From: Macrostomum lignano
Taxonomy: Eukaryota
Direction of reading: 5' to 3'
NCBI GenBank assembly: GCA_002269645.1
Contig: NIVC01003968.1
Location: forward strand, 1 to 64,000
DNA length: 64,000 nucleotides
Shown: in pieces, positions 16,342 through 63,800 of the stretch
How positions within the stretch are numbered: position 1 is the stretch's first letter
Layout: every line of letters begins with the position of its first letter
Notes under the pieces: model-generated
Seen by the model: only the letters and a program-made list of their open reading frames with translations
What the model was told of the DNA's origin: nothing
Database searches by the model: none
Position numbers and translations under genes: made by a program

Positions 16342-17793
<1,452 letters not shown>

Positions 17794-25206: not shown

Positions 25207-26886
25207 TCAAGCCAAGACTGTGGCATTGAAACTTGGCTGCATCGACGAGGCGTCGATGACAATCGCAGACGCGTTCCCATGGTGACCGCTTTCGCCAGGC
25301 ACCCGCGGCGGCACAAGCAGGCGTAGCGTCAGGGACGCCGCTAGCACAGTCACAAGGCCGAATAGCACGGGCAGCTTGGAGCGGACCGCGTTGCGCTGCT
25401 TTGCGCCATTAGTTGACGCGCTCAGAAGATAAGAGGACGCCACCTTGGCCGTGTTCTCCTGGCTCCCGGTCGGCTCCGATGGCTCGGGCTCCGGTAGAAG
25501 AGGTCGCCGCTCGCTAATCAGCTCCATGTCGGTCTCCATCTCGGCGTTGAAGTGGGCGGCAGTGGCTCGACCTCGCCAGTCGAGGCGTAGCGCGCAGATG
25601 GCCAGCAGGATGAAGAATGAGACAGATGAAGTGGCGAAGCCGACCCAGAGGCCGTTGAGTCCCCAGCCGGCGGCGAAGGCGAGAGAAATTCCCAATGGAG
25701 CGCCGATAACATAGTAGCCGATGACGTTCATGAGCAACGTGTGCAGATGGCTGTTGCACGCTCTTAATGCGGCTATGCTGGGATAGGCAGCTAGTTGAAA
25801 GGCCGTATAGATTGACAGGTATGGAGACATTGCCACATACAGCTCTGTGGCTTCGGGTTCCAGAGAGAAGATCCGAGGCACCTCATAGCGCAGTAGGAAG
25901 AAGATTATTCCAATCACGGCGCCCATAGTGCCCATAAAGGCCAGGCTAGTAAGCACTAGCCGGACCAATTTTTCGGGCTGCTGGGTGCTCAAATAGTAGC
26001 CGATGCGAGAGATGAGGGCGCTTCCGATGCCTACCGGGATGAGGAAAGCGATGACGTTGAGCTGGAACAGCACTGACTCGGCCGCGATCTCCGCTTTGCC
26101 TATCAGTCCGGCCAGAAAGTTGCCGTACTCTGTGCCTAAGTACCACAGAGACTGGGTGAGCAGGCAGGGCATCACGGTGTACAAAAACTTGCCCCAGTCC
26201 ATGAAGGCGCGAGTGGACCAGCCCGACCAAGTGTCGCGGTGGATGTTCAGACCCCAGATAAAGGCGGTCTGGAGTATTGGAAGCAAGCAGAGACTAATTG
26301 AGAGGCCAAGAGCCGAGCCTGTAAGTCCCAAACCGGCTACTGTCACCAGTAAATACTGCAGCAGAGTGTTGGCGCCGAGGGAGACGCACCGAACGACAAA
26401 TGTAGGCCAGAGGTAGCCGACCGCATCAGTGTAGGCGTTGAGAGCGTCGTACAGGTTCATGGACAAGCTGCCGGGCATTAGGATTATGAGAAAACGCTCG
26501 GCTTTGACTGAAATAACCGGGTCTTGGCCCAACAGGATAAGCAGGTTACCCGCGTTCATGACTAACGTCCAGTTAAAGCAGGTCAGCAGCACAGAGGTCA
26601 ACAGTCCGCGCTGTACAAAGTTGCCAACACGATGCTTCTTGCTACCGCCGATGGTCTGCGCTAGAAATGGCATGAGGCCCCAGCGCACCGAGGAAGCGCA
26701 ATTCTCCACCGTCAGCTGAAAGATGGACAGCGATAGTCCGGCCGCGTCTAGATCCTCCGTGCCTAACGCACCGCAAAAGGCGAGCGTGACTGGCATCATC
26801 ATGCAGTAGAACAGCTGAGTGGCAGACATCGGCATGCCGCGCCGCATGATCCAGGCCAACTCGCGGGCGCTCTCGACGACTGTCAT
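25207..26886 (-). CDS. SLC47A: MATE family (SLC47-like) exporter, copy 2, intronless
   Basis: Near-identical tandem paralogue. The duplicated unit of about 2.3 kb includes the flanks (AGATAACGTAACTGATTTTACCGTTT at about 22488 and 24794). Confidence 0.9.
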   Translation of the reverse strand: MTVVESARELAWIMRRGMPMSATQLFYCMMMPVTLAFCGALGTEDLDAAGLSLSIFQLTVENCASSVRWGLMPFLAQTIGGSKKHRVGNFVQRGLLTSVLLTCFNWTLVMNAGNLLILLGQDPVISVKAERFLIILMPGSLSMNLYDALNAYTDAVGYLWPTFVVRCVSLGANTLLQYLLVTVAGLGLTGSALGLSISLCLLPILQTAFIWGLNIHRDTWSGWSTRAFMDWGKFLYTVMPCLLTQSLWYLGTEYGNFLAGLIGKAEIAAESVLFQLNVIAFLIPVGIGSALISRIGYYLSTQQPEKLVRLVLTSLAFMGTMGAVIGIIFFLLRYEVPRIFSLEPEATELYVAMSPYLSIYTAFQLAAYPSIAALRACNSHLHTLLMNVIGYYVIGAPLGISLAFAAGWGLNGLWVGFATSSVSFFILLAICALRLDWRGRATAAHFNAEMETDMELISERRPLLPEPEPSEPTGSQENTAKVASSYLLSASTNGAKQRNAVRSKLPVLFGLVTVLAASLTLRLLVPPRVPGESGHHGNASAIVIDASSMQPSFNATVLA

Positions 26887-28099
26887 GTCTGCAGGCTGAA
26901 GCTGATTGCTGATTGCTGATTTTATGCTCGATATACGTATTAAACGAATGAATATTGTTGCTTTCACTTGCGCGGTGCAGCTGGCGTATTTATAAACTAG
27001 TTTTTCCAGACCAGTTTCGCCTAACTGCCTGGTATCCCGTAGAAACGAGTTTGTTCACGCTTTCTCGCAACTAGTTTTCTAAAATTAGTCCTTTACGACG
27101 ATAATTTTGGAATTAAAGTTAAACCGGAAATTGGGAGGGGAGAATGTAGCAGCCAGTTTGAGGCACTCAGGCAGCTTCACTAGTGAGAGTCTCTGCATCG
27201 GCAGACGAGAGTAGCCCACACGTTTGCTAGTAGGTCAAAGGTAGAAAGTTTCACGTGTTTCGTTATCAGTTCATGCAACTGTCGCAACTGCACGCTATGA
27301 GGGTGTGGGAACACTGGCGTGAGCAGACAGGCCTGAAGAGTTTGCATCGAATGCTCGTGCGTCTGGAGTGGATTGCACACCAGTTTTTGCCAGTTTAGAA
27401 CCAGTTTTCTATCTGATTAGCAAAAAGTTATTTCAAGTGCAAGCAGGGGTCATATAAAGTGACCTACTATTTTGTCGTAGGTAGTGACAAGAATTTAATG
27501 GAGCCACTATCTTATTGACTCGTAATATGCATGTACTTTCTTTATTTAACAAACGAAGTCAATGTTGACCTTCTCAACAATTCGCATCATCATATAGCCG
27601 TTCAGTACCAGGAAGTCTTTTCATTCCAGAGCATTTGAAAACCGCAGTAACCGCAGGCGAATTCCGCATATGAGGGGTGAACAAAAATTTTCTGGATTTG
27701 AACAGATAGTTAATGGGCTACTGACAATCAATGTACAAGAAGAGTTGGACAACGCTCAGAGAGAGCACTCGCCATTTGTGGTAGGCACTGGTTGGGATAC
27801 CCCACACCAGTGACTGTGACCTGCTGCACAAGTAACACCATGGCTGAATGGCCGGCTTAGTCGCAAAATTGCTTCCATTTGCTCAGCGACACAAAGGTGG
27901 GGTGCTTCCTATTGGAATCCCCTAGGGCCGACTGCTACGTTGTCTCTAGGTCAAATTTGTAGATCCAGGACTCATCGCCACTGAAGATTTCCCAGAACGA
28001 GTGGGAATGACCGAGTATGTTGCGGCACGACGTCACTAAGGCCTGTTTTTACTCCTTGGTACTTGATCCTTTGCTCTTTGATGAGGTATCCGGCGGGCC

Positions 28100-30720: not shown

Positions 30721-32900
30721 TCAAACGTGAAGCTGCATTGGTTGAGTCTCAGCCTGCACTTGAACCACCTCCCTCACGGCCCCATTTGAGTTGCCAACCT
30801 CGGGAACGGCCGAATACCGGACGCGTAGTGGCTGCCCAGCACCGTCACCGCTGCCCAGCTGGCCGCAGCATCGCCCACAGGCCCGAGAGTCGGCAACGGG
30901 TGAAGCAAAAGCAAAGTAGATGATTGGGTTGAGCACGCTGTGCAGCAGAACGAGGTGGCGCAGCAGCGGCATCAGCGGCGAGTCGGCGAGCAAGCGACCG
31001 TTAGAAAATACGTTGGCCAGGATGGCTAGGAGATACGGCAGCCAGCAGGCTAGGAAGGCGTTTACAACTGTCAGACTCATGTACACCGCCCTGATTTTAG
31101 CTCGCGATAGGAGCCGACTGCCGGATGCGCGATGGACGGTCAAGCGCTGACCAATTACTCCAGTGTTGCTGCTGCTGTGGGCTTCGCTAGCGCAGCTAAT
31201 GCTATTTGGGTTGGACAGCTCGGCATTGTGGGCGGCTCGGGTGCGGCGCCAAATTGTTTGTACAATTCGAGTGTAACAATAGACCATGATAGTTGTGGGA
31301 ATGGCGAACACAAACAACGGTACGTAAAGAACGTAAACTTTACGCTGCCAATCGGCCGTGTAGCCACTGCTACTACATTGAATAACGCTGACGTTGAATG
31401 GGTTGTCTTCAGCGTCAGTTTGTTCTACTGAGACCGTCTTGACACGAAAGATTAATAGTTGTGGCGTAGAGAATAGCAGTGCAGCCAGCCAGCATGCGCC
31501 GATGCGGCGGGCAATAAAACTGTTGCTACGAAATATTGCGAGCGGTTTAACAATCACCTGTTGGTTGGTTGGTTGGTTGGTTGGTTGGTTGGTTGGTTGG
31601 TTGGTTGGTTGGTTGGTTGGTTGGTTGGTTGGTTGGTTGGTTGGTTGGTTGGTTGGTTGGTTGGTTGGTTGGTTGGTTGGTTGGTTGGTTGGTTGGTTGG
31701 TTGGTTGGTTGGTTGGTTGGTTGGTTGGTTGGTTGGTTGGTTGGTTGGTTGGTTGGTTGGTTGGTTGGTTGGTTGGTTGGTTGGTTGGTTGGTTGGTTGG
31801 TTGGTTGGTTGGTTGGTTGGTTGGTTGGTTGGTTGGTTGGTTGGTTGGTTGGTTGGTTGGTTGGTTGGTTGGTTGGTTGGTTGGTTGGTTGGTTGGTTGG
31901 TTGGTTGGTTGGTTGGTTGGTTGGTTGGTTGGTTGGTTGGTTGGTTGGTTGGTTGGTTGGTTGGTTGGTTGGTTGGTTGGTTGGTTGGTTGGTTGGTTGG
32001 TTGGTTGGTTGGTTGGTTGGTTGGTTGGTTGGTTGGTTGGTTGGTTGGTTGGTTGGTTGGTTGGTTGGTTGGTTGGTTGGTTGGTTGGTTGGTTGGTTGG
32101 TTGGTTGGTTGGTTGGTTGGTTGGTTGGTTGGTTGGTTGGTTGGTTGGTTGGTTGGTTGGTTGGTTGGTTGGTTGGTTGGTTGGTTGGTTGGTTGGTTGG
32201 TTGGTTGGTTGGTTGGTTGGTTGGTTGGTTGGTTGGTTGGTTGGTTGGTTGGTTGGTTGGTTGGTTGGTTGGTTGGTTGGTTGGTTGGTTGGTTGGTTGG
32301 TTGGTTGGTTGGTTGGTTGTTGTTGGTTGGTTGGTTGGTTGGTTGGTTGGTTGGTTGGTTGGTTGGTTGGTTGGTTGGTTGGTTGGTTGGTTGGTTGGTT
32401 GGTTGGTTGGTTGGTTGGTTGGTTGGTTGGTTGGTTGGTTGGTTGGTTGGTTGGTTGGTTGGTGGCTGTATAGTTAAATCTGTAAAGCTGATGCTGATCC
32501 TACCTCAAAGCGATCAATGCTCATAGCCACCAGCAGAAAAGCGGTGGACGCCAGGCACACAAACTGCGTGTAGACAGTCATCTTACACATGACGACGCCT
32601 AGAGTCCATTGACCGAACACCGTAAATAGCAGCTCTCCCGTGCAGACTACCGAACCCACAGCCAAATCACCAACGGCCAAGTTCAGTAGGAAGCAATTGA
32701 GGCGAAGGATTCGGCCAGTTTGACGTCGGGCTCGACGAATGTGTGCTACAAGTAGAGCGTTGCCGCACAGAGTCGTAAGCATAATCGCGCCTAGGAGAGC
32801 CAACGTGCCAACAGACTGCTTGCTCAGATGGTACTCGTAGACGACTGGTCCGTTAGCATTTCGTGAACTGTGTTGATTGATGGAATAAGTGGGTTTTCAT
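30721..32900 (-). CDS. Rhodopsin-family neuropeptide GPCR of the vasopressin/oxytocin-CCAP/NPS receptor group; exons about 32900-32504 and 31557-30721; N-terminus unresolved
   Basis: TM1 GN, TM2 [24 protein letters not shown]|VIVKPL (donor GAG|gtagga at 32503, acceptor cag|GTG at 31558, phase 0), [14 protein letters not shown]...YCY..I...[23 protein letters not shown]. The frame stays open upstream ([10 protein letters not shown]) with no ATG. Confidence 0.88.
31560..32462. repeat. (TTGG)n microsatellite of about 900 bp filling the GPCR intron
   Basis: Directly visible and nearly perfect, with one interruption near 32318. Confidence 0.98.
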
Positions 32901-48142: not shown

Positions 48143-48467
48143 TCCTGAATTTTCTAAATACAAAAGTTCAAAAGAACATACCACAAAGGCAGGCATCTGC
48201 CAAACTCATTTAATTATGTAAGGCACAAGTTAATTGTCTGTCAATAATAAATATTTTACGAGCGTATTAGCTAATTATCACGGCTAGAAGGAAAAATGAT
48301 CAGTTGAAAATTAACAAAGGTCAACTATAGAAATAAAGAATTACTAAACTACAAATCCGAGAAAGCACCAAGTCCGTTAGCAGACAGCAGTGAAGTGCGT
48401 ATGAAAAATGCAGACATGTTTCATGGCTAAAAAGAGTGCATTTTGCATACCAGTGAACATCTCACAC

Positions 48468-48616
48468 AGGTGGATCTGTCCACAGAGAGATCTGTCACAC
48501 AAGTAGATCTGTCACACAAGTAGATCTGTCACACAAGTAGATCTGTCACACAGGTAGATCTGTCACACAGGTAAATCTGTCACACAGGTAGATCTGTCAC
48601 ACAGGTAGACCTGTCA
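48468..48616. repeat. 17-bp tandem repeat (TAGATCTGTCACACAAG)
   Basis: Directly visible. Confidence 0.9.
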
Positions 48617-48762
48617 CCAAACAATTTGAATTTCCGCTCCGGGCCATCTGAAAGAAAGATTAAAAAAGAAAGGAATGAAATCACGAATATGCAGTATCAA
48701 ATTTAAATTTTGCTGGCACAAACAAACAAATGGATGCTCCGGATGAAGTATTAACTGCTTAC

Positions 48763-48952
48763 TTGGATCGAAGGCACATCTCGACCGGGCTGACTTCAGC
48801 GGTTGGGGGCAGCTCAATGCCCACTGACGATTTTCTTTCCCCTTCAGGTGCCAACGGCGACTCCGAGGTGTCGGCGGATTCTCTGAGCGAGGCGGCGGAC
48901 GAAGTGGCCGAGGATGATGAAGAGTTCTGGTCTGAGAAATTGCCGCGGCAGT
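48763..48952 (-). CDS. Probable upstream exon of INTU (Ser/Ala/Pro-rich)
   Basis: Acceptor ccccatccccag| at 48953 and strong donor |gtaagc at 48762. The frame is open ([15 protein letters not shown]...EMCLRSK). Its phase does not match the 47586 exon directly. Confidence 0.4.
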
Positions 48953-48987
48953 CTGGGGATGGGGGGGGGGCAGCGGCGGGCTTGTAG

Positions 48988-49714
<727 letters not shown>

Positions 49715-49784
49715 TCAAACCCAAAATTACAGCTCGGATACAATGAGCCAGTACAGTACAGAAACATTTTTTAGATCTTAGAGG

Positions 49785-50960
49785 CTGGCGCCCCTTTGTG
49801 CTGGCGCCCCTTGGTGCTGGCGCCCCTTGGTGCTGGCGCCCCTTGGTGCTGGCGCCCCTTGGCGCTAAAGCCCCTTGGTGTTGGCGCCCCTTGGTGCTGG
49901 CGCCCCTTGGTGCTGGCGCTTCTTGGCGCTAAAGCCCCTTGGTGCTAAAGCCCCTTGGTGCTAAAGCCCCTTGGTGCTAAAGCCCCTTGGTGCTAAAGCC
50001 CCTTGGTGCTAAAGCCCCTTGGTGCTAAAGCCCCTTGGTGCTAAAGCCCCTTGGTGCTAAAGCCCCTTGGTGCTAAAGCCCCTTGGTGCTAAAGCCCCTT
50101 GGTGCTAAAGCCCCTTGGTGCTAAAGCCCCTTGGTGCTAAAGCCCCTTGGTGCTAAAGCCCCTTGGTGCTAAAGCCCCTTGGTGCTAAAGCCCCTTGGTG
50201 CTAAAGCCCCTTGGTGCTAAAGCCCCTTGGTGCTAAAGCCCCTTGGTGCTAAAGCCCCTTGGTGCTAAAGCCCCTTGGTGCTAAAGCCCCTTGGTGCTAA
50301 AGCCCCTTGGTGCTAAAGCCCCTTGGTGCTAAAGCCCCTTGGTGCTAAAGCCCCTTGGTGCTAAAGCCCCTTGGTGCTAAAGCCCCTTGGTGCTAAAGCC
50401 CCTTGGTGCTAAAGCCCCTTGGTGCTAAAGCCCCTTGGTGCTAAAGCCCCTTGGTGCTAAAGCCCCTTGGTGCTAAAGCCCCTTGGTGCTAAAGCCCCTT
50501 GGTGCTAAAGCCCCTTGGTGCTAAAGCCCCTTGGTGCTAAAGCCCCTTGGTGCTAAAGCCCCTTGGTGCTAAAGCCCCTTGGTGCTAAAGCCCCTTGGTG
50601 CTAAAGCCCCTTGGTGCTAAAGCCCCTTGGTGCTAAAGCCCCTTGGTGCTAAAGCCCCTTGGTGCTAAAGCCCCTTGGTGCTAAAGCCCCTTGGTGCTAA
50701 AGCCCCTTGGTGCTAAAGCCCCTTGGTGCTAAAGCCCCTTGGTGCTAAAGCCCCTTGGTGCTAAAGCCCCTTGGTGCTAAAGCCCCTTGGTGCTAAAGCC
50801 CCTTGGTGCTAAAGCCCCTTGGTGCTAAAGCCCCTTGGTGCTAAAGCCCCTTGGTGCTAAAGCCCCTTGGTGCTAAAGCCCCTTGGTGCTAAAGCCCCTT
50901 GGTGCTAAAGCCCCTTGGTGCTAAAGCCCCTTGGTGCTAAAGCCCCTTGGTGCTAAAGCC
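49785..50960. repeat. 16-bp minisatellite (GGTGCTAAAGCCCCTT; first copies GGTGCTGGCGCCCCTT)
   Basis: Directly visible, about 70 copies. Confidence 0.98.
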
Positions 50961-51012
50961 GATGAAAAGCTACTTGTAGCTACAAGTTGTACCGTAGGAA
51001 TCCAAATTTTGC

Positions 51013-54000
51013 TTAAAATTTGTCGAGACGACAACCACAGAATACGAGTATTCGACCCAACGCTGTTACTATGAGTATAGTAACGAGGGTCAACCCTAAA
51101 GGCACACAGACTGGGTCGATTGCCTTACGATTAAAATCCAAATAAGATATCTGGAGATTTTGTTGAGCCGCTGTCAAACTCTTACCAACAGTTGCTTTCC
51201 CAGGTGCTCGGCTGCGCAACTCTGGCGTTAGCAACAACAGTTCGAACAGGCGCTCGGCTCGCCAATCGCTGACTAATTTGGAATCGCAGGCGAAGGCGAC
51301 CACGTACTGCTGCTGCTGCTGCTGCTGTCCGGTCTGCAGCTCCAACAGCCAAATTGGCGCCCGAGGCGACTTAAGAAACGAACCAATCTGATAGGGCTGA
51401 GCATTCCGTCTAGTGGAGAACTCTCGGCTGCTTAAAAGGCCAACATCGCATCGATTTGGTACACCGGCGAGTCTGAGCACAGATCCGTTGGGAGCCGCCT
51501 CGTCTGAGTAGTGATTGCAGACCTGACTTACCGGACTGCCGCATAGCAGTAGTAGCAGCAGGCTCTGATTGGCTAGGTTTTCTGGACCAATCAGAGGCCA
51601 TGGCGAGCCATCCGGCGGCTTGTATACGGGTCTGGATTGGTATGCGGGTCTGGATTGATTTGACATGGTATACCGAAATCTGAAGGCTCCAACATGATAT
51701 AAGTCACTTTAAAGTTGTCTTCTTGAAGCATTGCAACCAGTGAAGCTACGTGTGGAACGAGTGAAGCTACGAGTGGAACCAGTGAAGCTACGTGTGGAAC
51801 GAGTGAAGCTACGAGTGGAACCAGTGAAGCTACGAGTGGAACCAGTGAAGCTACGAGTGGAACCAGTGAAGCTATGTGTGGAACCAGTGAAGCTAAGAGT
51901 GGAACCAGTGAAGCTACGAGTGGAACCAGTGAAGCTACGAGTGGAACCAGTGAAGCTACGAGTGAACCAGTGAAGCTACGAGTGGAACCAGTGAAGCTAA
52001 GAGTGGAACCAGTAAAGCTACGAGTGGAACCAGTAAAGCTACAAGTGGAACCAGTAAAGCTACGTGTGGAACCAGTGAAGCTAAGAGTGGAACCAGTGAA
52101 GCTACGAGTGGAACCAGTGAAGCTACGAGTGGAACCAGTGAAGCTACGAGTGGAACCAGTGAAGCTACGAGTGGAACCAGTAAAGCTACGTGTGGAACGA
52201 GTGAAGCTAAGAGTGGAACCAGTGAAGCTAAGAGTGGAACCAGTGAAGCTACGAGTGGAACCAGTGAAGCTACGAGTGGAACCAGTGAAGCTATGTGTGG
52301 AACCAGTGAAGCTAAGAGTGGAACCAGTGAAGCTACGAGTGGAACCAGTAAAGCTACGTGTGGAACGAGTGAAGCTAAGAGTGGAACCAGTGAAGCTAAG
52401 AGTGGAACCAGTGAAGCTACGGGTTGAACCAGTGAAGCTAAGAGTGGAACCAGTGAAGCTACGTGTGGAACCAGTGAAGCTACGAGTGGAACCAGTAAAG
52501 CTACGTGTGGAACGAGTGAAGCTAAGAGTGGAACCAGTGAAGCTAAGAGTGGAACCAGTGAAGCTACGAGTGGAACCAGTAAAGCTACGAGTGGAACCAG
52601 TAAAGCTACGGGTTGAACCAGTGAAGCTAAGAGTGGAACCAGTGAAGCTAAGAGTGGAACCAGTGAAGCTACGGGTTGAACCAGTGAAGCTACGGGTTGA
52701 ACCAGTGAAGCTACGGGTTGAACCAGTGAAGCTACGGGTTGAACCAGTGAAGCTACGGGTTGAACCAGTGAAGCTACGGGTTGAACCAGTGAAGCTACGG
52801 GTTGAACCAGTGAAGCTACGGGTTGAACCAGTGAAGCTACGGGTTGAACCAGTGAAGCTACGGGTTGAACCAGTGAAGCTACGGGTTGAACCTGTGAAGC
52901 TACGGGTTGAACCAGTGAAGCTACGGGTTGAACCAGTGAAGCTACGGGTTGAACCTGTGAAGCTACGGGTTGAACCAGTGAAGCTACGGGTTGAACCAGT
53001 GAAGCTACGGGTTGAACCAGTGAAGCTACGGGTTGAACCTGTGAAGCTACGGGTTGAACCAGTGAAGCTACGAGTGGAACCAGTGAAGCTACGAGTGGAA
53101 CCAGTGAAGCTACGGGTTGAACCAGTGAAGCTACGGGTTGAACCTGTGAAGCTACGGGTTGAACCAGTGAAGCTACGAGTGGAACCAGTGAAGCTACGGG
53201 TTGAACCTGTGAAGCAAGTGGATCTGAATCACCGATCACGCACCTGTCCACGCCGAGGCTGAGCAGGCACGAGTAGATGAGCAAGACCAGTGATGGAGTG
53301 CGCTGACTTTCAAAACAGCGAATATTTTCGAGCAGAAATTGAACAACATTGCAGCCTGGCTGAGAGGTGTACACGTCCAGCTGAAATCGTTGTAGATTGG
53401 GAGTTTATCTAGCACTGCTACCAGCTGTGACCCTGTCCTTAATTACCCCGCCACCCATGTCCCTAATTACCCTGCCACCCAAGTCCTTAATTACCCCGCC
53501 ACCCATGTCCCTAATTACCATGCCACCCATGTCCCTAATTACCCTGCCACCCAAGTCCTTAATTACCCCGCCACCCATGTCCCTAATTACCCTGCCACCT
53601 ATCTGATATGTCCTTAATTACCATGCCACTTACTGTCTTAATTACACTTTCATAAACCGTGCTTAACTAAACGCTAGCCGATGTCCATAAATATAAATTC
53701 GAAAAGTATATAATGTCATTTTTGACGCACTAACCTTTTCGGATAAGCCATCCTTTACGTAGCTCAAACTATCTATATAGAAAATGCCTTTGGAATTTGG
53801 TCTAAAAATTAATAACGGGAGTTGACAAAATCGGCTATTGAATTATGAAATTGAGCGCTTGTTGTTTCAATTTTAACTCACAAGACAAGTTTCACACTGT
53901 CGCCGCACCGAGCCACAATGCTGGAAAAAGCGCGAGCCAACGCGGCGCTTCTTTGCGCCGGTCCGGCCAGTCGTTTCAATCGAATTGTCGGCTCTAAATT

Positions 54001-56675
54001 GTTGCCGCCGATTTTAGAGGCCGGGTTCGTCGGGTTTGCGGAAGCCTCGGTGAACAGCAACTGTCGGAGCAGCTCAGCTTGAACGGCGCACAGAGCAGAC
54101 CGGGGCTCCTGCTGCAGTAGTGTTAATTACAGCAAAATTCTACGGCAAGTTGTTGGAGAGTTTTGGCCGAGTGGTTAAGCGAATCGCTCTGTCAGTTAGA
54201 AGGGCCCGGGTTCAAACCACAGAGCGGTTAGAATTTATTATATAACAAAAACACAATGACTAAGTTATGGAGGAGGCGTAGCCGAGTGGTCAAGCGTATA
54301 GGTCTGGTGAATTATAATGCCCGGGTTCGAATCCTGTCGTCCGAAATCTGATTCTCGACTTTAAGCATGCTGGGTCCTCGAAATTTAATAAACAATTATA
54401 ATTAATTCTCGCCTCTCACAAAAAGGCACTATAGACCAATTTTCGAAACATATCGTCGTGTCAGTTAGGAATTTTCTTGAGTAACAAACTTTAGAACTTT
54501 ATACCGATTTAGTTATGACGAGCTCAAATGCTAATAAGCTAGATAAGCTAAGCTCGTTCCTGGACTCACCTTGGACGATGTCAGCAGGTAAGGCATCAGA
54601 TCGAAGCCAAAGTGGAAGCCTTGGCTAGCCCAGTCCGGACTAAAGCGGCTGTCCCCGCTGCCAAACAGAGCTACGCGTAGGGACTGCAATATTTTTAAAT
54701 TACACAATCAAAATAATAAGGCTTGCAAAATTCTTCAATTTTACCATTAGCAACATAGTTATATGAACCTTAGCTCTATGACTTTTGCGCGTCAGAAATT
54801 TAACAATAAATAAAAATATCAACATTTTTAGGCTCTAAGTTCTATTTCTTGGATAGATGTTTATATGGATCTTAAGTCAATTGTCACTCTCAGTCAACTG
54901 TCACTCTCAGTCAACTGTCACTCTCAGTCAAATGTCACTCTCAGTCAAATGTCACTCTCAGTCAACTGTCACTCTCAGTCAAATGTCACTCTCAGTAAAA
55001 TGTCACTCTCAGTCAAATGTCACTCTCAGTCAAATGTCACTCTCAGTCAACTGTCACTCTCAGTCAAATGTCACTCTCAGTAAAATGTCACTCTCAGTCA
55101 ACTGTCACTCTCAGTCAACTGTCACTCTCAGTCAAATGTCACTCTCAGTAAAATGTCACTCTCAGTCAACTGTCACTCTCAGTCAAATGTCACCCTTAGT
55201 CAAACTCCTCAGTCAGCTGTCATTCTCATTCTATTGTCACTCACAGCCAATTGTCACTCCCAATCAATGAGCAGTGTCTGCGATAGCATTTTCTATCAGC
55301 CCATATAAAACTTTGAAAATATGAAACATGAAAAACGATGCAATCTCAAAGCGCCTCACTTCAATTTGCTTCTCGGTGATCGGCTCTCGGATCCAAAGCT
55401 TGGCAGCGGCGGTTGTTGCAGGCTTTGACGAAGGAGCAACAAGATTTACTGCAGCGTCTTTGACAGTTTCCAACGCTTCGACTGTTGCCGGCGCTGGCGG
55501 CTGCGGTTTCAAGGTCTGCGACGCCTGCGGCGGCTTCGGCGGCGCCGGCAGAGCTTCCAGCAGCTGATTTTGCTGCTGCTTGTTAACAGATTTCCACCAC
55601 GGCCGATCAAGGGACAGTTTGGCCGGCGGCTGCTTCAAGGCAACTGGAGCTTCGTTAGCTGGCTTATTGTCATCATTAGCAGTAGTATTAGTACTTTTAG
55701 TAGCAATCGATGAATCTGCGTCGATTTTTTTGTTTGCGCTAATAATATCAGCAGCGACGAGTGGCGGCAGAAGCTCCGGTGTTGACTTAGTCGATGCCGA
55801 ATTGGAGGGCGAAGGCGAGGTCGTCGCTGGGCTGCTGGTGGTCTTGGGCAAGCTTGACCCGGCTTGACCACGGCGAACCGGTGGAAATTGCACAGAGTCC
55901 AGCTGTTGGCGGAAATAGTGGAAGTAAGTGTATTTGGTATCAGAAGGCTGAGTGGCTCGAGTGGCAGGGTGTTTACTGGGTTTTACTGGGTGTTTGGGGT
56001 GTCATTTTATTTGAATGGGGCACCAGCACCAGAGGCGCCAGCACCAGAGGCGCCAGCACCAGAGGCGCCAGCACCAGAGGCGCCAGCACCAGAGGCGCCA
56101 GCACCAGAGGCGCCAGCACCAGAGGCGCCAGCACCAGAGGCGCCAGCACCAGAGGCGCCAGCACCAGAGGCGCCAGCACCAGAGGCGCCAGCACCAGAGG
56201 CGCCAGCACCAGAGGCGCCAGCACCAGAGGCGCCAGCACCAGAGGCGCCAGCACCAGAGGCGCCAGCACCAGAGGCGCCAGCACCAGAGGCGCCAGCACC
56301 AGAGGCGCCAGCACCAGAGGCGCCAGCACCAGAGGCGCCAGCACAGATCAAAGCTCGAACCTCAGTCTCTGTCCTGTTAGAGATTCTGCTGCCAAAGGAA
56401 GCTGGAATTGCATCGCCACTTGCACCAAGTCTGCTGCTACCTGCAGGGGCGGTCGGTTTTCTGCCATGTGACGAAGTTATATGATGCTGCTGCTGTTTTT
56501 GTCCCAGCTGCTGCTGATGCTGCCATCTGGAGCCTCCAAGAGCTGCAACAGACAGTTCAGTGTCGATGTCATCTTCAATAACAAGATCGGCTGTTATTTG
56601 AGCCTGGCTTTTAGAATTGATGCGACTATTTCTGTGATTGATTTTAGCCTGTTTAAGGCTAGAGCCTGAAGCCAT
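51013..56675 (-). CDS. MINDY4: MINDY4/FAM188B-like (DUF4205) deubiquitinase homologue lacking the catalytic Cys and His; exons about 56675-56361, 55902-55360, 54683-54570, 54111-53882, 53432(or 53380)-53244, 51679-51013
   Basis: The spliced product gives EPITEKQIE|SLRVALFGS..RFSPDWASQGFHF...PYLLTSSK|QEPRSALCAVQAELLRQLLF, VQFLLENIRCFE...LVLLIYSCLLSLGVD|R, LIGPENLANQSLLLLLLCGSPVSQVCN, RCDVGLLS...QIGSFLKSPRAPIWL, LVSDWRAERLFEL. These match MINDY4 motifs as I recall them (GGPCGVLAAVQ, LKTPRFPIWV, DWRTERLFDLY). Most junctions are in phase. Confidence 0.8.
51742..53216. repeat. 21-bp minisatellite (GTGGAACCAGTGAAGCTACGA) filling the last MINDY4-like intron
   Basis: Directly visible. The VEPVKLR and VASLVQP ORFs are its translations. 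Confidence 0.98.
53435..53645. repeat. 24-bp tandem repeat (CCCTAATTACCCTGCCACCCATGT)
   Basis: Directly visible, abutting a splice acceptor. Confidence 0.9.
54155..54344 (+). pseudogene. Two tandem tRNA-derived sequences (tRNA pseudogenes or SINE heads), antisense within an intron
   Basis: A-boxes TGGCCGAGTGG and TAGCCGAGTGG, B-boxes GGTTCAAACC and GGTTCGAATCC at tRNA-like spacing. Acceptor and anticodon stems do not fold canonically. Confidence 0.55.
54880..55200. repeat. 17-bp minisatellite (GTCACTCTCAGTCAAAT) in a MINDY4-like intron
   Basis: Directly visible. Confidence 0.95.
56018..56345. repeat. 15-bp minisatellite (GGCGCCAGCACCAGA) in a MINDY4-like intron
   Basis: Directly visible, about 21 perfect copies. 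Confidence 0.97.
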
Positions 56676-59903: not shown

Positions 59904-60884
59904 ATGAATCAGAATCAGGCTAATGACGCCATCGCCATGCTGGCAGAAGAATTGCGAAACCGACTAGAGATAGGGCCGATGAGACACGTTAAGATTCAGA
60001 AATTCACACCTACGCAAGACATTCGGATCTGGCTAACAGCCTTCGATCAGCGCTGTGAAGTAGAAGGGATAGATGAGGAACATAGGAAGCAGGAATTGCT
60101 AGCTAATCTGGACCTGTCCACTGCATTCGCAGCGGTACAGCGCCTAAATCTGCCCGAGGATCTTGAATACGAAGAGTTCAAAGAGCGACTGATTGAGCGA
60201 TTCGGAAGAATCGGTAGTTCCGCAGAATTCAGAGAGGAGTTTCGTGGAAGAATGCAAGGCAGAAATGAGCCTGTAGAGACTTTCGCAGACTGTTTGATCG
60301 AGCTGGCATCGCGTGCATTTCCGAATATGACTGTTGAGCAGAGGGAAGAAGAAATTGTTGAGCAATTCATCAAGGGAATCAGAATTCCGTCAGAGACCCG
60401 TGAGAAGCTAATCTTTGCGCAGCCAGGCAATTTACAAGAGGCTAGAAGAATGCTAAGAAGGATGGAGGCTGCGTGGAACATGTCTCACAAGAATGTCAAC
60501 ATGAGAATGGCCAAAGGCGAAGGCGAGAGTGAGCAGAAGGCAGATCAGGAGAAGCTTGAGGACATCATCAAGAAGCAGAGAGCAGAGCTAGAGCAACAGA
60601 AGAAGGCGATTGAAGAGCTGATGGAAGAGAAGAGAGCTAGCCGTCAGCAGTATCATCCGCAGAATCAATATCAAACGTACGCTCAGGTCGCTGGACCGCA
60701 GCAGCAGCAGCAGCAGCAGCCAGTATGGCGCGGTCAGCCTCAGTTCAACAGGCAGCCACAGCAACAGCAGCAACCTCGAGCCTGCTACAATTGCGGAAAG
60801 CTTGGCCACATGGCGAGGAATTGCCAGAGCGCTAGGCCAAACGGTCAGCGAGTGGTGAACTACCAGAAGCAGCAGGGAAACTGA
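59904..60884 (+). CDS. gag: Ty3/Gypsy gag
   Basis: Capsid-like W...F...QGRNEPVETFADCL..LASRAF...IVEQFIKGI, CCHC knuckle CYNCGKLGHMARNC, intact 326 aa ending QGN*. Confidence 0.92.
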   Translation: MNQNQANDAIAMLAEELRNRLEIGPMRHVKIQKFTPTQDIRIWLTAFDQRCEVEGIDEEHRKQELLANLDLSTAFAAVQRLNLPEDLEYEEFKERLIERFGRIGSSAEFREEFRGRMQGRNEPVETFADCLIELASRAFPNMTVEQREEEIVEQFIKGIRIPSETREKLIFAQPGNLQEARRMLRRMEAAWNMSHKNVNMRMAKGEGESEQKADQEKLEDIIKKQRAELEQQKKAIEELMEEKRASRQQYHPQNQYQTYAQVAGPQQQQQQQPVWRGQPQFNRQPQQQQQPRACYNCGKLGHMARNCQSARPNGQRVVNYQKQQGN

Positions 60885-63800
60885 GTAGCGAGGGCCGCTT
60901 TGCGAGGCCACGTCCCTCTAGCAACAATTATCGCGAATTCAGGCCTCTGAATTTGTAAATAATGCGTATCGAAGTAATGCCAGACAGTATAGTAACAGCA
61001 GAACGCATGCCGAATTCAATAAATTTCACAGAAAACCAAATAAAAATTTTGCACCTCGTGTACATACGCCGCTTGCACCTAGTCATGCGTCTGCCAGCCA
61101 CAGTAGGCCGAATAATAAAGTACAAAGTACAGTAATTCCGAATGAGCATTCGAAGAAAGAATTCGAAGAAGATACGGAGAGAAAAGGACGAGAAGCAGTC
61201 GTCAATGGAATGCTAAGAAACCGAAAGGTCTACTTCCTGCTAGACACAGGAGCTGGACATAATTTCCTAAGCAAGAGTACTTGGAAAAAATGTTCAGAAG
61301 TGATGAAATTGAGTTGACTACTAGAAGAGTGACTACGTTTGACGGATCAAGTGTGCGAATTGAAGGAGAAGTCAGAACGAAAATACGATTCGGAGAGATA
61401 GAGATTGAGACAGAGTTCCTGCTGTGCAATCACGAGTGTGACGACATACTCGGGATGGAGTTCTTCATGAACTTCTGCGACAGCATCAGCCTTTCCAGAG
61501 GAATGCTTGTATTAAAAGAAGGGACCTGCATCCCAATTCAGTTTACAAAATTACCCGTACGGGTTTGCCGAATTACAGCCATAACAGCGTGACTATACCA
61601 GCGAATAGCGCTCTTCGAATTCCAATTAGAATGACTAAAGGATCAGAAGCTAACTATGGAACGCCAATGGTCATTGACACCATTGGAGGCCAAGTGACTA
61701 CGAAGAGAAATTCCTTAGAGATGATTCCTACTCTAGTGACCATGAACGATGGAACAGGAGTAGTGGAAATAATCAATCGACAGAATGACGATATCAGACT
61801 GACAAGATCTACGCTGATTGGAGTGGCCAAACCCTTGAAGCCAGGAGGCCTGGCCTACTCTATTAACAGCAAAGGTCAAGCCAGTTCAGATGATGCAATT
61901 AGGACAGTGAAGAGTGAAGAGAGTGAGTACAGCTGGATAAACGAGATCGATTTAGGAGAAGAGCTAACATCAGAACAGAAAGGACTAGTGATCGATTTGC
62001 TAAAGAAGAACAAGGAAGCATTTTCGCAGACCAACCAAGACATGGGTCTCACCCATCTTGTGACTCATGAAATATCTCTAAAAGATACCACACCGGTCAG
62101 GATTCCAACACGCAGAATTCCACCACATCTGCAAAAGCAAGTAGATGAGCAACTTGACGACATGCTTGCTAAGAACCTGATCCGACCATGCTATAGTACT
62201 TATTCAACGCCGCTAGTGATAGTTCCTAAGAAGGATGGATCCATAAGAATCGTCAGTGACTTCAGGGTCCTGAACTCGAGAGTGAACTATTACCCATATC
62301 CATTGCCGAACATACAAGAGACTTTCGCTCAGTTATCTGGAAGCAAGTACTTCAGTAGTCTAGATTTAAACTCTGGATACTGGCAGGTACCTATCAAAGA
62401 AGAGCACAAATTTATGACAGCCTTTTCCACCCTTACCAGAGGCCAGTTCGAATATCAGGTCATGGCACAGGGCTTGTCTAACGCTCCTGGTACATTCCAG
62501 AGACTCATGAATTTGGTGCTGATGGGAATACAGCACAAATTCGCGATGTCGTACATAGATGATATTGTGACATACTCAGAGAAATTCGAAGATCATCTCG
62601 GTCATCTGCAAGAAGTATTTCAAAGACTAATCTCAGCAGGACTAAAATTAAGACCAAAAAAGTGCAACTTGTTTCAGAAAGAGCTAAAGTACTTAGGGCA
62701 TATCGTAGGAAGAGAAGGGATTAGAACAGACCCAGCTAAGATCGAAGCGATACAGTCATGGCCTACGCCGAAAGAGGTCAAAGAACTGCGAAGCTTCTTG
62801 GGGTTGTGTAACTACTACTGCAGATTTGTAAAGAATTACGCAGAGGCAGCGCATCCGCTATTTCAATTAACTAAGAAAGGTATTCAAAACTTTAGGGAAA
62901 AGTGGACCAAGAAGCATGACGAGGCTTTCCAGCAGTTGAAGCAGAGAATGACATCGACCGAAGTACTCGCGTACCCAGAATTCTCAGAGAACGAAAATGT
63001 TCGAATGGTGTTAGACACCGACGCAAGCGAAGACCGAATTGGTGCTTGCCTGGGTCAAATACAATCGGACGGGGTTGAAAGACCCATTGCTTACTTCAGC
63101 AGAGCAATGAAAGAGTCTGAGAAAAGATATCCGATTACCAGAAAAGAGCTATTAGCGCTAGTAGATGGCATGAAACACTTCCGATTTTACCTAATTGGCA
63201 AAAGGTTTCTGGCTCGCACAGACCACAAGGCAATCCTATGGCTATTGCGCCAGACCGAAGCCCAAGGAATTCTCGGAAGGTGGATTGAAAGATTGAGTGA
63301 GTTTCAATACGATATTGAGCACCGCAGTGGAGCTAAACATTCCAATGCAGATGGATTGTCACGGCGACCCTCGGAATTACCAGTCGAGCAGAAAGATACT
63401 AAGATCAAAGAGAATGAGGCCGAAATTCCTAAGATGACAATAGAAACCAGCGCTGTGAAACAAGTCGTGACTAGCAGCGTGAAAGATCAGAGTTGCCAGA
63501 CCGACTTCACAGAAGAGTATGAATCAGATTCCGAAGACGAATTCGCAGATGATGAATACGAAGATGCCAGTGATCAGTTCGAAGATGATGATGACATCTA
63601 TGAAGATGCAAGAGACTATTTCGAAGAGGAAGAGACAGTGTGCAGAAGCTTCTGACAGATTACCTCTCGGTTCCATTGAAGAAAGAGCAGCTGACTTCAG
63701 CGCAGCATGCTGATCCTTCTATAAGAACCTTGATGGACTGGAAGCAGAAGAAAGTACGTGAGCCGAAGTTACCAGAAAATGCATCCGGAGAGTTGAAGAA

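What the first reader, a model, noticed from the sequence alone, without database searches (positions are those of the whole stretch)
51280..54683. MINDY4-like pseudo-deubiquitinase: all catalytic positions replaced, fold motifs kept
Established: MINDY DUBs use Q-x-x-G-G-P-C (oxyanion Gln, catalytic Cys) and S-H-F/Y (catalytic His). Seen: LTSSK|QEPRSALCAVQA has Gln to Ser and Cys to Arg (codon CGG at 54102-54100, two changes from TGY, so unlikely to be a single read error). The His site is replaced by a polyQ insert (PIWLLELQTGQQQQQQQYVVAF), and the downstream YYDG-type motif reads LLTP. Flanking structural motifs, splice phases and DWRAERLF are conserved. Inference: an expressed pseudoenzyme acting as a scaffold or ubiquitin-chain binder, possibly ciliary. 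Vertebrates have a putatively inactive MINDY4B, so independent origin needs testing.
Basis: partly seen in the sequence, partly recalled or inferred. Interest (0 to 1): 0.7.

Follow-up and report, generated by a model that had tools for sequence, protein, structure and literature searches.

The report
Dead MINDY4 deubiquitinase gene in flatworm
A flatworm (Macrostomum lignano) gene encodes a well-preserved MINDY4-type deubiquitinase fold in which every catalytic residue has been replaced. It seems to have lost activity separately from the known inactive MINDY4B proteins of other animals, which makes it an ordinary but clean new example of a pseudo-enzyme.

Summary
A spliced minus-strand gene (at least 55999..48614) matches the MINDY-3/4 catalytic domain (Pfam PF13898, E=1.2e-48). 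Mapped onto the solved MINDY3 structure, the oxyanion Gln is Ser36, the catalytic Cys is Arg42 (CGG, 54102-54100), and the Asp/Asn site is Thr318. The catalytic His lies in a hairpin carrying a (CAG)7 polyQ insert. The window is Macrostomum lignano; two UniProt models of that species carry the same dead site.

The scaffold is kept. The reading frame is intact, and all seven introns match homologues in position and phase. Of the family-conserved columns, 32 of 40 survive outside the active-site motifs but only 1 of 7 inside them. The ubiquitin-contacting S1 leucine is present, and the AlphaFold2 model is confident.

This is not a MINDY4B orthologue, although MINDY4B also has Arg at the Cys position. 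Neighbour-joining bootstraps, subfamily HMM scores, likelihood placement (15-31 lnL units worse for 4B; RELL 0.6% or less) and one intron all place it with true MINDY4. The loss of activity therefore looks independent.

Expression, selection after inactivation, a ciliary role, and whether the genome keeps an active paralogue could not be tested. Verdict: a new member of a known kind (pseudo-DUB), of moderate interest.

The parts
55359..55999 (-). Upstream coding exon. It is low-complexity, rich in S/T/P/A/Q, and ends ...LWIREPITEKQIE in phase 0 with donor GTGAGG. Its 5' limit is not determined; 55999 is only where the open frame starts.
   Evidence: Its end 'PITEKQIE|SLR' matches the family motif PIxxxxAxxLR that precedes the catalytic domain (consensus). 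The phase-0 intron here is shared with Amia, Nematostella, Trichoplax, Tubulanus and Oryzias genes. Sequence.
54570..54683 (-). Exon SLRVALFGSGDSRFSPDWASQGFHFGFDLMPYLLTSSK. Ser36 (TCG, 54578-54576) occupies the oxyanion-Gln position.
   Evidence: Q45 of MINDY3 maps here. Q45 is essential in MINDY3 (PMC13354579).
53882..54111 (-). Exon starting QEPRSALCAVQAELL. Gln39-Glu40 replace the GG of GGPC, and Arg42 (CGG, 54102-54100) replaces the catalytic Cys. Cys46 is at 54090-54088.
   Evidence: In the AlphaFold2 model the central helix begins at residue 42.
53735..53801 (-). 67-nt exon (L)PNSKGIFYIDSLSYVKDGLSEK. The phase-2 intron before it is the one shared with true MINDY4 genes and Nematostella but absent from three bilaterian MINDY4B genes and Trichoplax.
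53244..53380 (-). Exon LDVYTSQPGCNVVQFLLENIRCFESQRTPSLVLLIYSCLLSLGVD(R).
   Evidence: Both flanking introns are conserved in position and phase.
51186..51631 (-). Large exon formed by loss of at least four ancestral introns. It holds:
- the S1 Leu237 (CTC, 51471-51469);
- the PIWLL strand;
- the hairpin ELQTG(Q)7 (51342-51307), with (CAG)7 at 51327-51307 where the catalytic His should be;
- DWRAERLF (51267-51244);
- LLLLTP, with Thr318 (ACG, 51228-51226) in place of the Asp/Asn.
   Evidence: L245 of MINDY3 is essential for S1 ubiquitin binding (PMC13354579).
48763..48952 (-). Exon (D)[14 protein letters not shown]...PVEMCLRS(K). The linker is predicted disordered (pLDDT below 50 for residues 348-374), followed by the conserved C-terminal helix.
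   Evidence: Matches the C-terminus of P0002. Phase-1 and phase-2 introns are conserved. pLDDT.
48614..48647 (-). Last exon (K)[10 protein letters not shown] plus the stop codon TGA. It corresponds to the family's C-terminal ...CIRTKWxGAxxxW motif.
51735..53215 (.). Intronic tandem repeat (21 bp x about 70) filling the intron between exons 53380-53244 and 51631-51186. It is not coding.
   Evidence: The gene model with canonical GT-AG sites skips it.
48989..50960 (.). Two intronic tandem arrays: (CAGA)n of about 180 copies at 48989-49714, and a 16-bp unit x 73 at 49790-50960. They sit in the intron before the exon 48952-48763.

Best explanation
The window carries a Macrostomum lignano gene descended from the true MINDY4 (FAM188B) lineage. 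It has lost every residue needed for isopeptide hydrolysis but still encodes the complete MINDY-3/4 fold.

**Shown**
- It belongs to the family, and the Gln, Cys, His and Asp/Asn positions are all replaced.
- The Gly-rich Cys loop is destroyed.
- A CAG-repeat insertion occupies the His hairpin.
- The multi-exon reading frame is intact, with ancestral intron positions.
- Conserved residues are lost preferentially in the active site and kept in the scaffold.
- Phylogenetic placement is with true MINDY4, not with MINDY4B.

**Inferred**
- The protein cannot cleave ubiquitin chains. In MINDY3, the C51A, H287A and Q45A mutants are each inactive.
- It persists as a non-catalytic module that still docks ubiquitin at the S1 site, where the Leu equivalent to MINDY3 L245 is kept. 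It would then act as a K48-chain reader or scaffold, much as catalytically dead MINDY3 C51A still forms complexes with K48 chains.
- The Cys-to-Arg change is convergent with MINDY4B.

I cannot say whether the loss is specific to Macrostomum or older.
For: **Family membership**
- PF13898, E=1.2e-48.
- Family profile against MINDY3 chain 9rmd_A, E=2.7e-53, with the residue mapping given in the observation check.

**Species and reproducibility**
- Two M. lignano UniProt models share the same Arg and polyQ (P0002 98% identical to the query by phmmer; P0001 aligned); the polyQ is 7 versus 11 residues long.

**Gene integrity**
- Seven core exons (plus an upstream one) have canonical GT-AG sites and no stop in 405 core codons.
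- 4.4% of possible point changes would create a stop. An unconstrained frame would survive 0.1 substitutions per site with a probability of only about 0.5%. The branch leading to this protein is about 1 substitution per amino-acid site.
- 7 of 7 introns are conserved in position and phase.

**Pattern of loss**
- 33 of 47 family-wide conserved columns are kept: 1 of 7 inside the active-site motifs and 32 of 40 outside (Fisher p=0.0016).

**Fold and binding site**
- AlphaFold2 mean pLDDT 85.4, pTM 0.87. The helix starts at Arg42 and the polyQ sits in the hairpin between strands 276-282 and 290-296.
- The S1 Leu is kept. Its role in MINDY3 is reported in PMC13354579.

**Not MINDY4B**
- Neighbour joining attaches it on the canonical side in 168 of 200 bootstraps and inside 4B in about 5%.
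- HMM score (4B minus canonical) is -15.6 bits, or -28.6 with catalytic motifs masked. True 4B members score +58 to +153 unmasked (+43 to +126 masked) when left out of the model.
- Likelihood placement puts it inside or at the stem of canonical MINDY4 with weight about 1.0. The 4B stem is 14.8 to 23.1 lnL units worse and the inside of 4B is 26.5 to 31.1 worse. RELL support for any 4B placement is 0.6% or less.
- The phase-2 intron at VKLVL is present in Amia and Notodromas MINDY4 and in Nematostella. It is absent from the Tubulanus, Oryzias and Amphiura 4B genes.
- It reads VSQVCN, like canonical VSNVFN, not the 4B PYxHNG. It reads IGSFLKSP, like canonical VGSYLKTP, not the 4B VGSMLKTP.
Against: - No expression data could be obtained. 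The only support is two automatic gene models, each lacking one or two exons, which could reflect assembly errors or decay.
- One copy (P0001) has a five-residue deletion in the conserved GSFLKSP motif. It also has a frame-compensating splice, which hints at relaxed constraint in at least one copy.
- I could not compute dN/dS because no DNA of paralogues or sister species was available.
- The protein is among the most degenerate members: 70% of conserved columns kept, against a mean of 79% for 4B and 92% for canonical.
- Its HMM score is intermediate rather than typically canonical; canonical members score -89 to -164.
- The likelihood analysis used a home-made BLOSUM62-derived model, a fixed neighbour-joining backbone and 41-42 taxa.
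- AlphaFold2 confidence comes largely from the homologue alignment.
- Ubiquitin binding is inferred from a single conserved Leu.
Confidence: 0.6

Rival explanations
1. It is simply the flatworm orthologue of MINDY4B (FAM188B2), the known inactive paralogue. On this view the Arg at the Cys position and the Thr at the Asp position are inherited, not convergent, and fast evolution has blurred its affinity.
For: - 20 of 25 MINDY4B-type representatives have Arg at the Cys column and 3 have Lys. Several read YYTG where this protein reads LLTP.
- MINDY4B exists in protostomes: Tubulanus, and Rhodnius, whose PYLLKGPKNTTRG resembles PYLLTSSKQEPRS.
- The HMM score of this protein is intermediate, not clearly canonical.
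Against: - Likelihood placement is 15-31 lnL units worse, with RELL 0.6% or less, even with the shared Arg and Thr columns included.
- Neighbour-joining bootstraps place it inside 4B in about 5% of replicates.
- The HMM log-odds is negative, whereas every true 4B member scores at least +58.
- It keeps an intron that three bilaterian 4B genes lack.
- It has canonical-type motifs where 4B has PYxHNG and VGSM.
- Long-branch attraction would pull it towards the fast-evolving 4B clade, not away from it.
Confidence: 0.07
2. It is a gene on its way to becoming a pseudogene. It lost its function, and the intact frame only reflects too little time since constraint was lifted. One or more of the duplicated copies in this polyploid-like genome are already decaying.
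For: - Copy P0001 has a deletion in a conserved motif and a compensated frameshift, and both database models skip exons.
- A slippage-prone (CAG)n varies in length between copies: 7 versus 11.
- Overall conservation is the lowest in the family.
- No transcript-derived proteins were found in the large protein collection beyond two single-member clusters.
Against: - The window copy has no stop or frameshift across 405 core codons, and every splice site is intact.
- Losses are concentrated in the active site while the scaffold is kept (p=0.0016). Neutral decay would not do this.
- The active-site motifs carry many changes (GG to QE, Cys to CGG, SESH to TG+Qn, YYYDG to LLLTP) and are identical in all three copies. 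The inactivation therefore predates their divergence, yet the frame survived.
Confidence: 0.2
3. The inactivation is older than Macrostomum. On this view the gene belongs to a wider clade of Cys-to-Arg MINDY4 derivatives that includes P0014, a metatranscriptome protein from an unknown animal, which has Arg and Thr at the Cys and Gln sites but still has SDSHF and YYDG.
For: - Neighbour joining pairs the two in 127 of 200 bootstraps.
- They share Arg at the Cys column.
- The sister placement is only 5.2 lnL units worse, with RELL 0.27.
Against: - Likelihood prefers separate placements. P0014 sits next to mollusc and vertebrate MINDY4.
- With catalytic motifs masked, the sister placement drops to -9.1 lnL and RELL 0.15. 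Much of the signal is therefore the shared Arg itself.
- The two proteins are only about 35% identical.
Confidence: 0.2
4. It is still a hydrolase that uses other residues, for example Cys46 or Cys221 with His223 in VSQVCNHY.
For: A Cys lies four residues after Arg42. The motif VSNVF(N/D) has become VSQVCNH, which creates a Cys-x-His pair.
Against: - Cys46 lies one turn inside the helix, not at its N-terminal cap.
- The Gly-rich loop and the oxyanion Gln are gone.
- Neither of the two His residues of the core aligns with the catalytic strand.
- In MINDY3, single mutations of the Cys, His or Gln abolish activity (PMC13354579).
Confidence: 0.03

Closest known systems
MINDY4 (FAM188B), the K48-specific cysteine deubiquitinase found in animals and many protists
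   Same: - Same domain (PF13898), with the nearest sequences at 34-37% identity.
- Likelihood and neighbour-joining placement fall in this clade.
- Shared intron positions, including the VKLVL intron.
- Shared motifs: VS.V.N, VGS[YF]LK[TS]P, PIW, DWRAER.F, and the C-terminal CxR[ST]KWxGA.
- A long, low-complexity N-terminal region.
   Different: - Gln, Cys, His and Asp are all replaced and the GGPCG loop is destroyed.
- There is a seven-residue polyQ insertion at the His hairpin.
- Trp of ILWRAG, Arg of LSR and the YYY are lost.
- No PF26038 N-terminal dimerisation domain was detected.
- The branch is roughly twice as long as for typical members.
MINDY4B (FAM188B2), named 'inactive ubiquitin carboxyl-terminal hydrolase MINDY-4B' in NCBI records of fish, echinoderms, insects and a nemertean
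   Same: - A catalytically dead MINDY-3/4 fold.
- Arg at the catalytic Cys position, loss of the His, and Thr/Asn/Ser at the Asp position.
- Presumably a non-catalytic role.
   Different: - Not in the same clade.
- MINDY4B has its own motifs (PYxHNG, VGSM, PIW[VL][TC]) and lacks the VKLVL intron.
- Many 4B genes have a phase-0 intron before PxxG.
- MINDY4B proteins are short (about 390-450 aa), whereas this gene has a long N-terminal exon.
MINDY3 (FAM188A), solved structure 9RMD
   Same: Same fold family. It gives experimentally defined roles for C51, H287, Q45 and L245, which I used to map this protein. Dead MINDY3 C51A still binds K48 chains.
   Different: MINDY3 is active. It also carries an EF-hand ubiquitin-binding insertion that is absent here.
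Cnidarian and placozoan MINDY4B-like proteins (Nematostella XP_048589055, Orbicella, Actinia, Trichoplax TRIADDRAFT_51423)
   Same: They also have degenerate active sites: Gln to Phe/Tyr, Cys to Gly/Ala/Glu (kept in Actinia and Trichoplax), and His lost. The hairpin reads TGGRYGVVF, superficially like TG(Q)nYVVAF here.
   Different: They group with MINDY4B, not with this gene. Public records label them as probable active hydrolases.
Pseudo-deubiquitinases in general: inactive members of DUB families that act as scaffolds or allosteric partners (from my own knowledge of the field)
   Same: The fold and ubiquitin-facing surface are kept while the catalytic residues are lost.
   Different: No partner, complex or phenotype is known for this protein.

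Membership tests
MINDY-3/4 catalytic-domain family (Pfam PF13898) | Significant match to the family HMM over most of the domain | tested here: met
   E=1.2e-48, 166.3 bits against a cut-off of 27, residues 5-320 on profile positions 3-295 of 344. The family profile also hits MINDY3 chain 9rmd_A at E=2.7e-53.
Active MINDY deubiquitinase | Catalytic Cys at the N-terminus of the central helix (GGPC) | tested here: not met
   Arg42, codon CGG at 54102-54100. GG is replaced by Gln-Glu.
Active MINDY deubiquitinase | Catalytic His (S-H-F/Y at the start of the strand after PIWV) | tested here: not met
   The hairpin reads ELQTG(Q)7Y, with no His under any alignment. The only His residues in the core are at positions 24 and 223.
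Active MINDY deubiquitinase | Oxyanion-hole Gln six residues before the Cys | tested here: not met
   Ser36 (TCG, 54578-54576). The alignment is anchored by the conserved intron.
Active MINDY deubiquitinase | Third triad position (Asp of YYDG, Asn386 in MINDY3; dispensable in MINDY3) | tested here: not met
   Thr318 in LLLLTP.
Active MINDY deubiquitinase | S1-site Leu that contacts the Ile44 patch of ubiquitin (MINDY3 L245) | tested here: met
   Leu237 in RLAG aligns with L245. The role of L245 is from PMC13354579.
Active MINDY deubiquitinase | Cleavage of K48-linked polyubiquitin | not testable with these tools
   This needs a biochemical assay.
MINDY4B (FAM188B2) subfamily | Positively charged residue (Arg or Lys) at the Cys position | tested here: met
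   Arg42. In 4B representatives the column is Arg in 20 and Lys in 3 of 25.
MINDY4B (FAM188B2) subfamily | Phylogenetic placement inside, or as sister to, the MINDY4B clade | tested here: not met
   Neighbour joining gives about 5%. Likelihood placement is 14.8 to 31.1 lnL units worse, with RELL 0.6% or less.
MINDY4B (FAM188B2) subfamily | Higher score to the 4B subfamily HMM than to the canonical one | tested here: not met
   -15.6 bits (-28.6 masked). True members left out of the model score +58 to +153 unmasked, +43 to +126 masked.
MINDY4B (FAM188B2) subfamily | Subfamily motifs (PYxHNG, VGSMLKTP) and gene structure (no intron at the V.LP position) | tested here: not met
   The protein reads VSQVCNH and IGSFLKSP, and the intron is present.
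MINDY4 proper (FAM188B) | Placement within the canonical MINDY4 clade | tested here: met
   Likelihood weight about 1.0 for inside or stem of the canonical clade. RELL is 0.93, 0.70 and 0.85; most of the remainder goes to a sister position with P0014, which is itself canonical-derived.
MINDY4 proper (FAM188B) | N-terminal dimerisation domain (PF26038), seen in vertebrate MINDY4 | tested here: inconclusive
   No Pfam or tblastn match in the upstream exons or the rest of the window. However, the 5' exons of the gene are not resolved, and I did not check how widely this domain occurs outside vertebrates.

The most novel reading that the evidence does not exclude
The replacement of Cys by Arg is not accidental. 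It appears to have happened independently in bilaterian MINDY4B, in this flatworm MINDY4 derivative, and probably in the unknown animal of P0014. In MINDY4B it has been held (as Arg or Lys) in 23 of 25 representatives spanning protostomes and deuterostomes.

A guanidinium at the cap of the active-site helix could turn the former hydrolase pocket into a reader of a carboxylate, such as the free Gly76 C-terminus of unanchored ubiquitin chains. That would be a recurrent enzyme-to-receptor conversion. In addition, M. lignano may have no active MINDY4 at all.
Probability: 0.12. Interest if true: 0.65.

Novelty: new member of a known kind. Interest (0 to 1): 0.38.

Why it matters
Pseudo-enzymes in the ubiquitin system often act as readers, scaffolds or allosteric partners. 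MINDY4 and MINDY4B are among the least studied deubiquitinases.

A second, independently inactivated MINDY4-fold protein has arrived at the same Cys-to-Arg substitution as MINDY4B. It sits in a flatworm where RNAi and transgenesis are available. This offers a natural comparison for asking what a dead MINDY fold does and whether the Arg has a role.

It also corrects a database label: the UniProt entries for this gene are named as a ubiquitin carboxyl-terminal hydrolase. The same caution applies to the cnidarian 'probable MINDY-4' records. In itself, though, a lineage-specific loss of catalytic residues is a common event, and no function is shown.

Tried and rejected
- **Word-indexed protein searches.** All three searches returned only the two M. 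lignano models, plus echinoderm MINDY4B for the profile: the raw sequence, the low-complexity-masked sequence and a 29-sequence family profile. I could not list other M. lignano MINDY paralogues or other Macrostomum species.
- **Contig look-ups.** P0001, P0002 and P0044 are not on record. No paralogue DNA means no dN/dS.
- **Literature.** Supplementary tables of two M. lignano transcriptome/genome papers have no FAM188 or MINDY entry. No paper mentions both MINDY4 and flatworm.
- **Structure comparison.** Foldseek of the model against the PDB gave nothing below E=0.36. That library stops in April 2026; the only solved MINDY-3/4 fold, 9RMD, was absent from the Foldseek matches (its paper appeared in June 2026). 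This says nothing about the fold. Model coordinates are not exposed, so I could not measure distances around Arg42, Cys46 or His223.
- **N-terminal domain.** No MINDY4 N-terminal dimerisation domain was found upstream by tblastn or Pfam.
- **tRNA-like stretches.** ARAGORN found no tRNA in the tRNA-like parts of intron 1.
- **P0137.** I considered this MINDY4B-type protein as a possible Macrostomum 4B. I rejected that because its GC3 is 0.87, against 0.55-0.71 for genes in this window.
- **First literature search.** It was badly framed and uninformative.
Full report
**What is in the sequence.**
Read on the minus strand, the flagged interval contains five exons with canonical GT-AG borders (54683-54570, 54111-53882, 53801-53735, 53380-53244, 51631-51186).

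The gene is larger than the flagged interval. Two more exons (48952-48763 and 48647-48614, stop TGA) supply the C-terminus. At least one upstream exon, ending at 55359, supplies a low-complexity N-terminal region. The last residues of that exon, PITEKQIE, joined to SLR, reproduce the family motif PIxxxxAxxLR.

The introns are filled with large tandem arrays, which is why the exons are so far apart.

The 331-residue core matches Pfam PF13898 (MINDY-3/4 catalytic domain) at E=1.2e-48. The only solved relative by sequence is MINDY3, 9RMD.

Two UniProt proteins of Macrostomum lignano, both named 'Ubiquitin carboxyl-terminal hydrolase MINDY', are near-identical over shared exons; P0002 is 98% identical by phmmer. 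The window is therefore from that flatworm or a very close relative.

**The catalytic positions.**
The MINDY3 structure paper shows that C51, H287 and the oxyanion residue Q45 are each essential. N386 is dispensable, and L245 at the S1 site is essential for ubiquitin binding (PMC13354579).

A profile of 63 family members aligns to 9rmd_A at E=2.7e-53 and gives this mapping:

| MINDY3 residue | Role | Window residue |
|---|---|---|
| Q45 | oxyanion hole, essential | Ser36 |
| H287 | catalytic His, essential | hairpin ELQTG(Q)7 |
| N386 | third position, dispensable | Thr318 of LLLLTP |
| L245 | S1 ubiquitin contact, essential | Leu237, retained |

- The two glycines of GGPC are Gln-Glu. A phase-0 intron just before this motif, shared by all seven compared genes, fixes the alignment without gaps.
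- Twelve residues stand where canonical proteins have five (CSESH). The excess of seven equals a pure (CAG)7 tract. The paralogous model P0002 has eleven Q, so the tract behaves as a microsatellite.
- The core has only two histidines (positions 24 and 223), and neither is in the catalytic strand.
- Cys46 (SALC) lies one turn inside the helix that starts at Arg42 in the AlphaFold2 model.

**Is the scaffold maintained?**
- The window copy has no stop or frameshift in 405 core codons.
- All seven introns coincide in position and phase with introns of homologues from fish, an ostracod, a sea anemone, Trichoplax, a nemertean and a brittle star. At least four ancestral introns have been lost from the large exon 51631-51186.
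- Of 47 columns conserved in at least 80% of 137 relatives, the protein keeps 33. It keeps 1 of the 7 inside the three active-site motifs and 32 of the 40 outside (Fisher p=0.0016).
- 4.4% of point substitutions would create a stop, and the branch leading to this protein is about one substitution per amino-acid site. Most of that divergence must therefore have occurred under selection for an open frame.
- AlphaFold2 with the family alignment gives mean pLDDT 85.4 and pTM 0.87, with only the Ser-rich linker (348-374) disordered. That confidence is largely borrowed from the alignment.

Against this, model P0001 from another copy carries a five-residue deletion in the conserved GSFLKSP motif and a frame-compensating splice. 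Both database models skip exons. These could be real decay, alternative splicing, or errors in an early long-read assembly. I could not tell which.

**MINDY4B or independent?**
The exhaustive HMMER search returned 381 relatives. The nearest from another species is only 34-37% identical. Three kinds of relative stand out:

- **Canonical MINDY4.** It has GGPC, SESH and YYDG, and occurs in animals and also in protists (Entosiphon, Triparma).
- **MINDY4B.** NCBI names it 'inactive ... MINDY-4B' in fish, echinoderms, Rhodnius and the nemertean Tubulanus. It has Arg (20 of 25) or Lys (3 of 25) at the Cys position, and the His is usually lost.
- **A cnidarian group plus Trichoplax.** Their active sites are also degenerate, and they cluster with MINDY4B.

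Because the window protein also has Arg at the Cys site and Thr at the Asp site, shared ancestry with MINDY4B was the obvious alternative. Four tests speak against it:

1. **Neighbour joining.** With gamma-corrected distances, it attaches on the canonical side in 168 of 200 bootstraps and inside 4B in about 5%.
2. **Subfamily HMMs.** The score (4B minus canonical) is -15.6 bits, or -28.6 with catalytic motifs masked. Every true 4B sequence left out of the model scores +58 to +153, and canonical ones score -89 to -164. The protein is aberrant but leans canonical.
3. **Likelihood placement.** I used a backbone of 41-42 taxa, a reversible model derived from BLOSUM62 and four gamma categories. Essentially all likelihood weight falls inside or at the stem of the canonical clade. 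The 4B stem is 14.8, 18.0 and 23.1 lnL units worse (all columns; P0014 added to the backbone; catalytic motifs masked). The inside of 4B is 26.5 to 31.1 units worse. RELL support for any 4B placement is 0.6% or less.
4. **An intron.** The phase-2 intron at VKLVL is present in the two canonical genes and in Nematostella. It is absent from the three bilaterian MINDY4B genes examined and from Trichoplax.

Motif-level characters agree. The protein reads VSQVCN and IGSFLKSP, like canonical VSNVFN and VGSYLKTP, not the 4B PYxHNG and VGSMLKTP. Long-branch attraction would favour the fast-evolving 4B clade, so the result runs against the expected artefact.

The caveats are my home-made substitution model, the fixed backbone, and the absence of other flatworm sequences.

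**A possible relative.**
P0014 comes from a JGI metatranscriptome and its organism is unknown. It has Arg at the Cys site and Thr at the Gln site but keeps SDSHF and YYDG.

Neighbour joining pairs it with the window protein in 64% of replicates. Likelihood prefers to place it beside mollusc and vertebrate MINDY4, and puts the sister arrangement 5.2 to 9.1 lnL units lower.

Either way, Cys-to-Arg has arisen more than once in this fold. A single T-to-C transition turns TGY into CGY, so mutational bias explains part of this. The long retention of Arg or Lys in MINDY4B nevertheless suggests the positive charge is useful. That is inference.

**Most likely mechanism.**
The protein cannot be a cysteine protease of the known MINDY type. 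Three residues that are individually essential in MINDY3 are missing, the Gly-rich loop is gone, and the His hairpin carries a repeat insertion.

The best reading is a non-catalytic MINDY4 derivative that retains the ubiquitin-docking surface, since the S1 Leu is kept. It would act as a reader or scaffold for K48-linked chains. This follows the observation that dead MINDY3 C51A still forms complexes with K48 chains (PMC13354579).

- Shown: family membership, dead site, intact gene, selective retention of the scaffold, placement with MINDY4.
- Inferred: ubiquitin binding and any cellular role.
- Unsupported: the ciliary suggestion.

The main rival is that the gene is drifting towards pseudogene status. 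I give that about 0.2.

**What could not be done.**
The word-indexed protein search failed to retrieve distant relatives. As a result I could not list other MINDY genes of M. lignano, so the question of an active paralogue stays open. I also could not obtain sister-species sequences or paralogue DNA for dN/dS. Foldseek found nothing because its PDB copy does not hold 9RMD. Two Macrostomum papers' supplements did not mention the gene.

**Verdict.**
The finding is real and correctly read. Its open question is answered in favour of an independent origin, with moderate confidence.

It is a new member of a known kind, a pseudo-deubiquitinase. It also shows that the UniProt name 'hydrolase' for this gene is probably wrong. 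Interest is moderate: lineage-specific inactivation is common. The convergent Cys-to-Arg change and the tractable host give it some value as a test case.

Noticed in passing
window 48462-56344 (arrays at 48462-48617, 48989-49714, 49790-50960, 51735-53215, 53430-53599, 54875-55267, 56019-56344): The introns and flanks of this gene consist largely of long, very regular tandem repeats: 4-, 15-, 16-, 17-, 21- and 24/72-bp units, up to 180 copies, 88-99% matches. The 15-bp array at 56019-56344 is in frame with an ATG-initiated ORF (56675-56007) reading (GASGA)n. It is unclear whether that is a 5' coding exon or intron.
   Followed up: partly
window 54170-54345, minus strand (intron after exon 54683-54570): Two stretches resemble tRNA 3' halves (...GGATTCGAACCCGGGC... 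and ...GGTTTGAACCCGGGCCC...CGCTTAACCACTCGGCC). They look like tRNA-derived SINE fragments. ARAGORN calls no tRNA there.
   Followed up: partly
window 2151-4114 and 8665-10535 (-); 13462-14244 and 17836-18621 (-); 22907-24667 and 25207-26967 (-): There are three pairs of tandemly duplicated genes:
- Vav-like exchange factors (CH, RhoGEF, C1, SH2);
- secreted C-type lectin-like proteins, identical over their first ~180 residues;
- MATE transporters.

An RNase H/reverse-transcriptase fragment (16801-17736) lies between the two lectin copies.
   Followed up: partly
window 59904-63655 (+): A retrotransposon with long gag (zinc knuckle) and pol (RT, RNase H) reading frames open over the parts scanned. 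It lies just upstream of the MINDY4-like gene region.
   Followed up: partly
window 30721-32526: A rhodopsin-type GPCR ORF (7tm_1, E=2.4e-25) on the minus strand abuts a long 12-bp repeat. On the plus strand the repeat reads (GWLV)n in three overlapping ORFs.
   Followed up: no
P0014 / locus L008 (JGI metatranscriptome 3300036111, contig Ga0393294_017624): A MINDY4-type protein of an unknown animal has Arg at the catalytic Cys and Thr at the oxyanion Gln, but the His (SDSHF) and YYDG are intact. It may be a half-way stage of inactivation, and a second or shared origin of the Cys-to-Arg change.
   Followed up: partly
P0006, P0017, P0023 (Orbicella, Nematostella, Actinia); P0100 (Trichoplax): Cnidarian proteins annotated 'probable ubiquitin carboxyl-terminal hydrolase MINDY-4/FAM188B' lack the oxyanion Gln (Phe/Tyr) and the His, and in two of the three named species the Cys (Actinia keeps it). 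Trichoplax keeps the Cys but not the His. They group with MINDY4B, so the inactive lineage seems to predate bilaterians, and these records are probably mislabelled as active.
   Followed up: partly
P0001, P0002, P0003 (M. lignano UniProt models from other loci): - The paralogous copies differ in polyQ length (7 versus 11).
- P0001 has a five-residue deletion in the conserved GSFLKSP motif and a compensated frameshift.
- P0003 strings together three copies of the C-terminal exon sequence. This suggests a tandem duplication or misassembly elsewhere in the genome.
   Followed up: partly
P0120 (representative search): At least one otherwise canonical-looking relative has Ser in place of the catalytic Cys (RGPSG) with the His kept. 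Sporadic active-site loss seems recurrent in this family.
   Followed up: no
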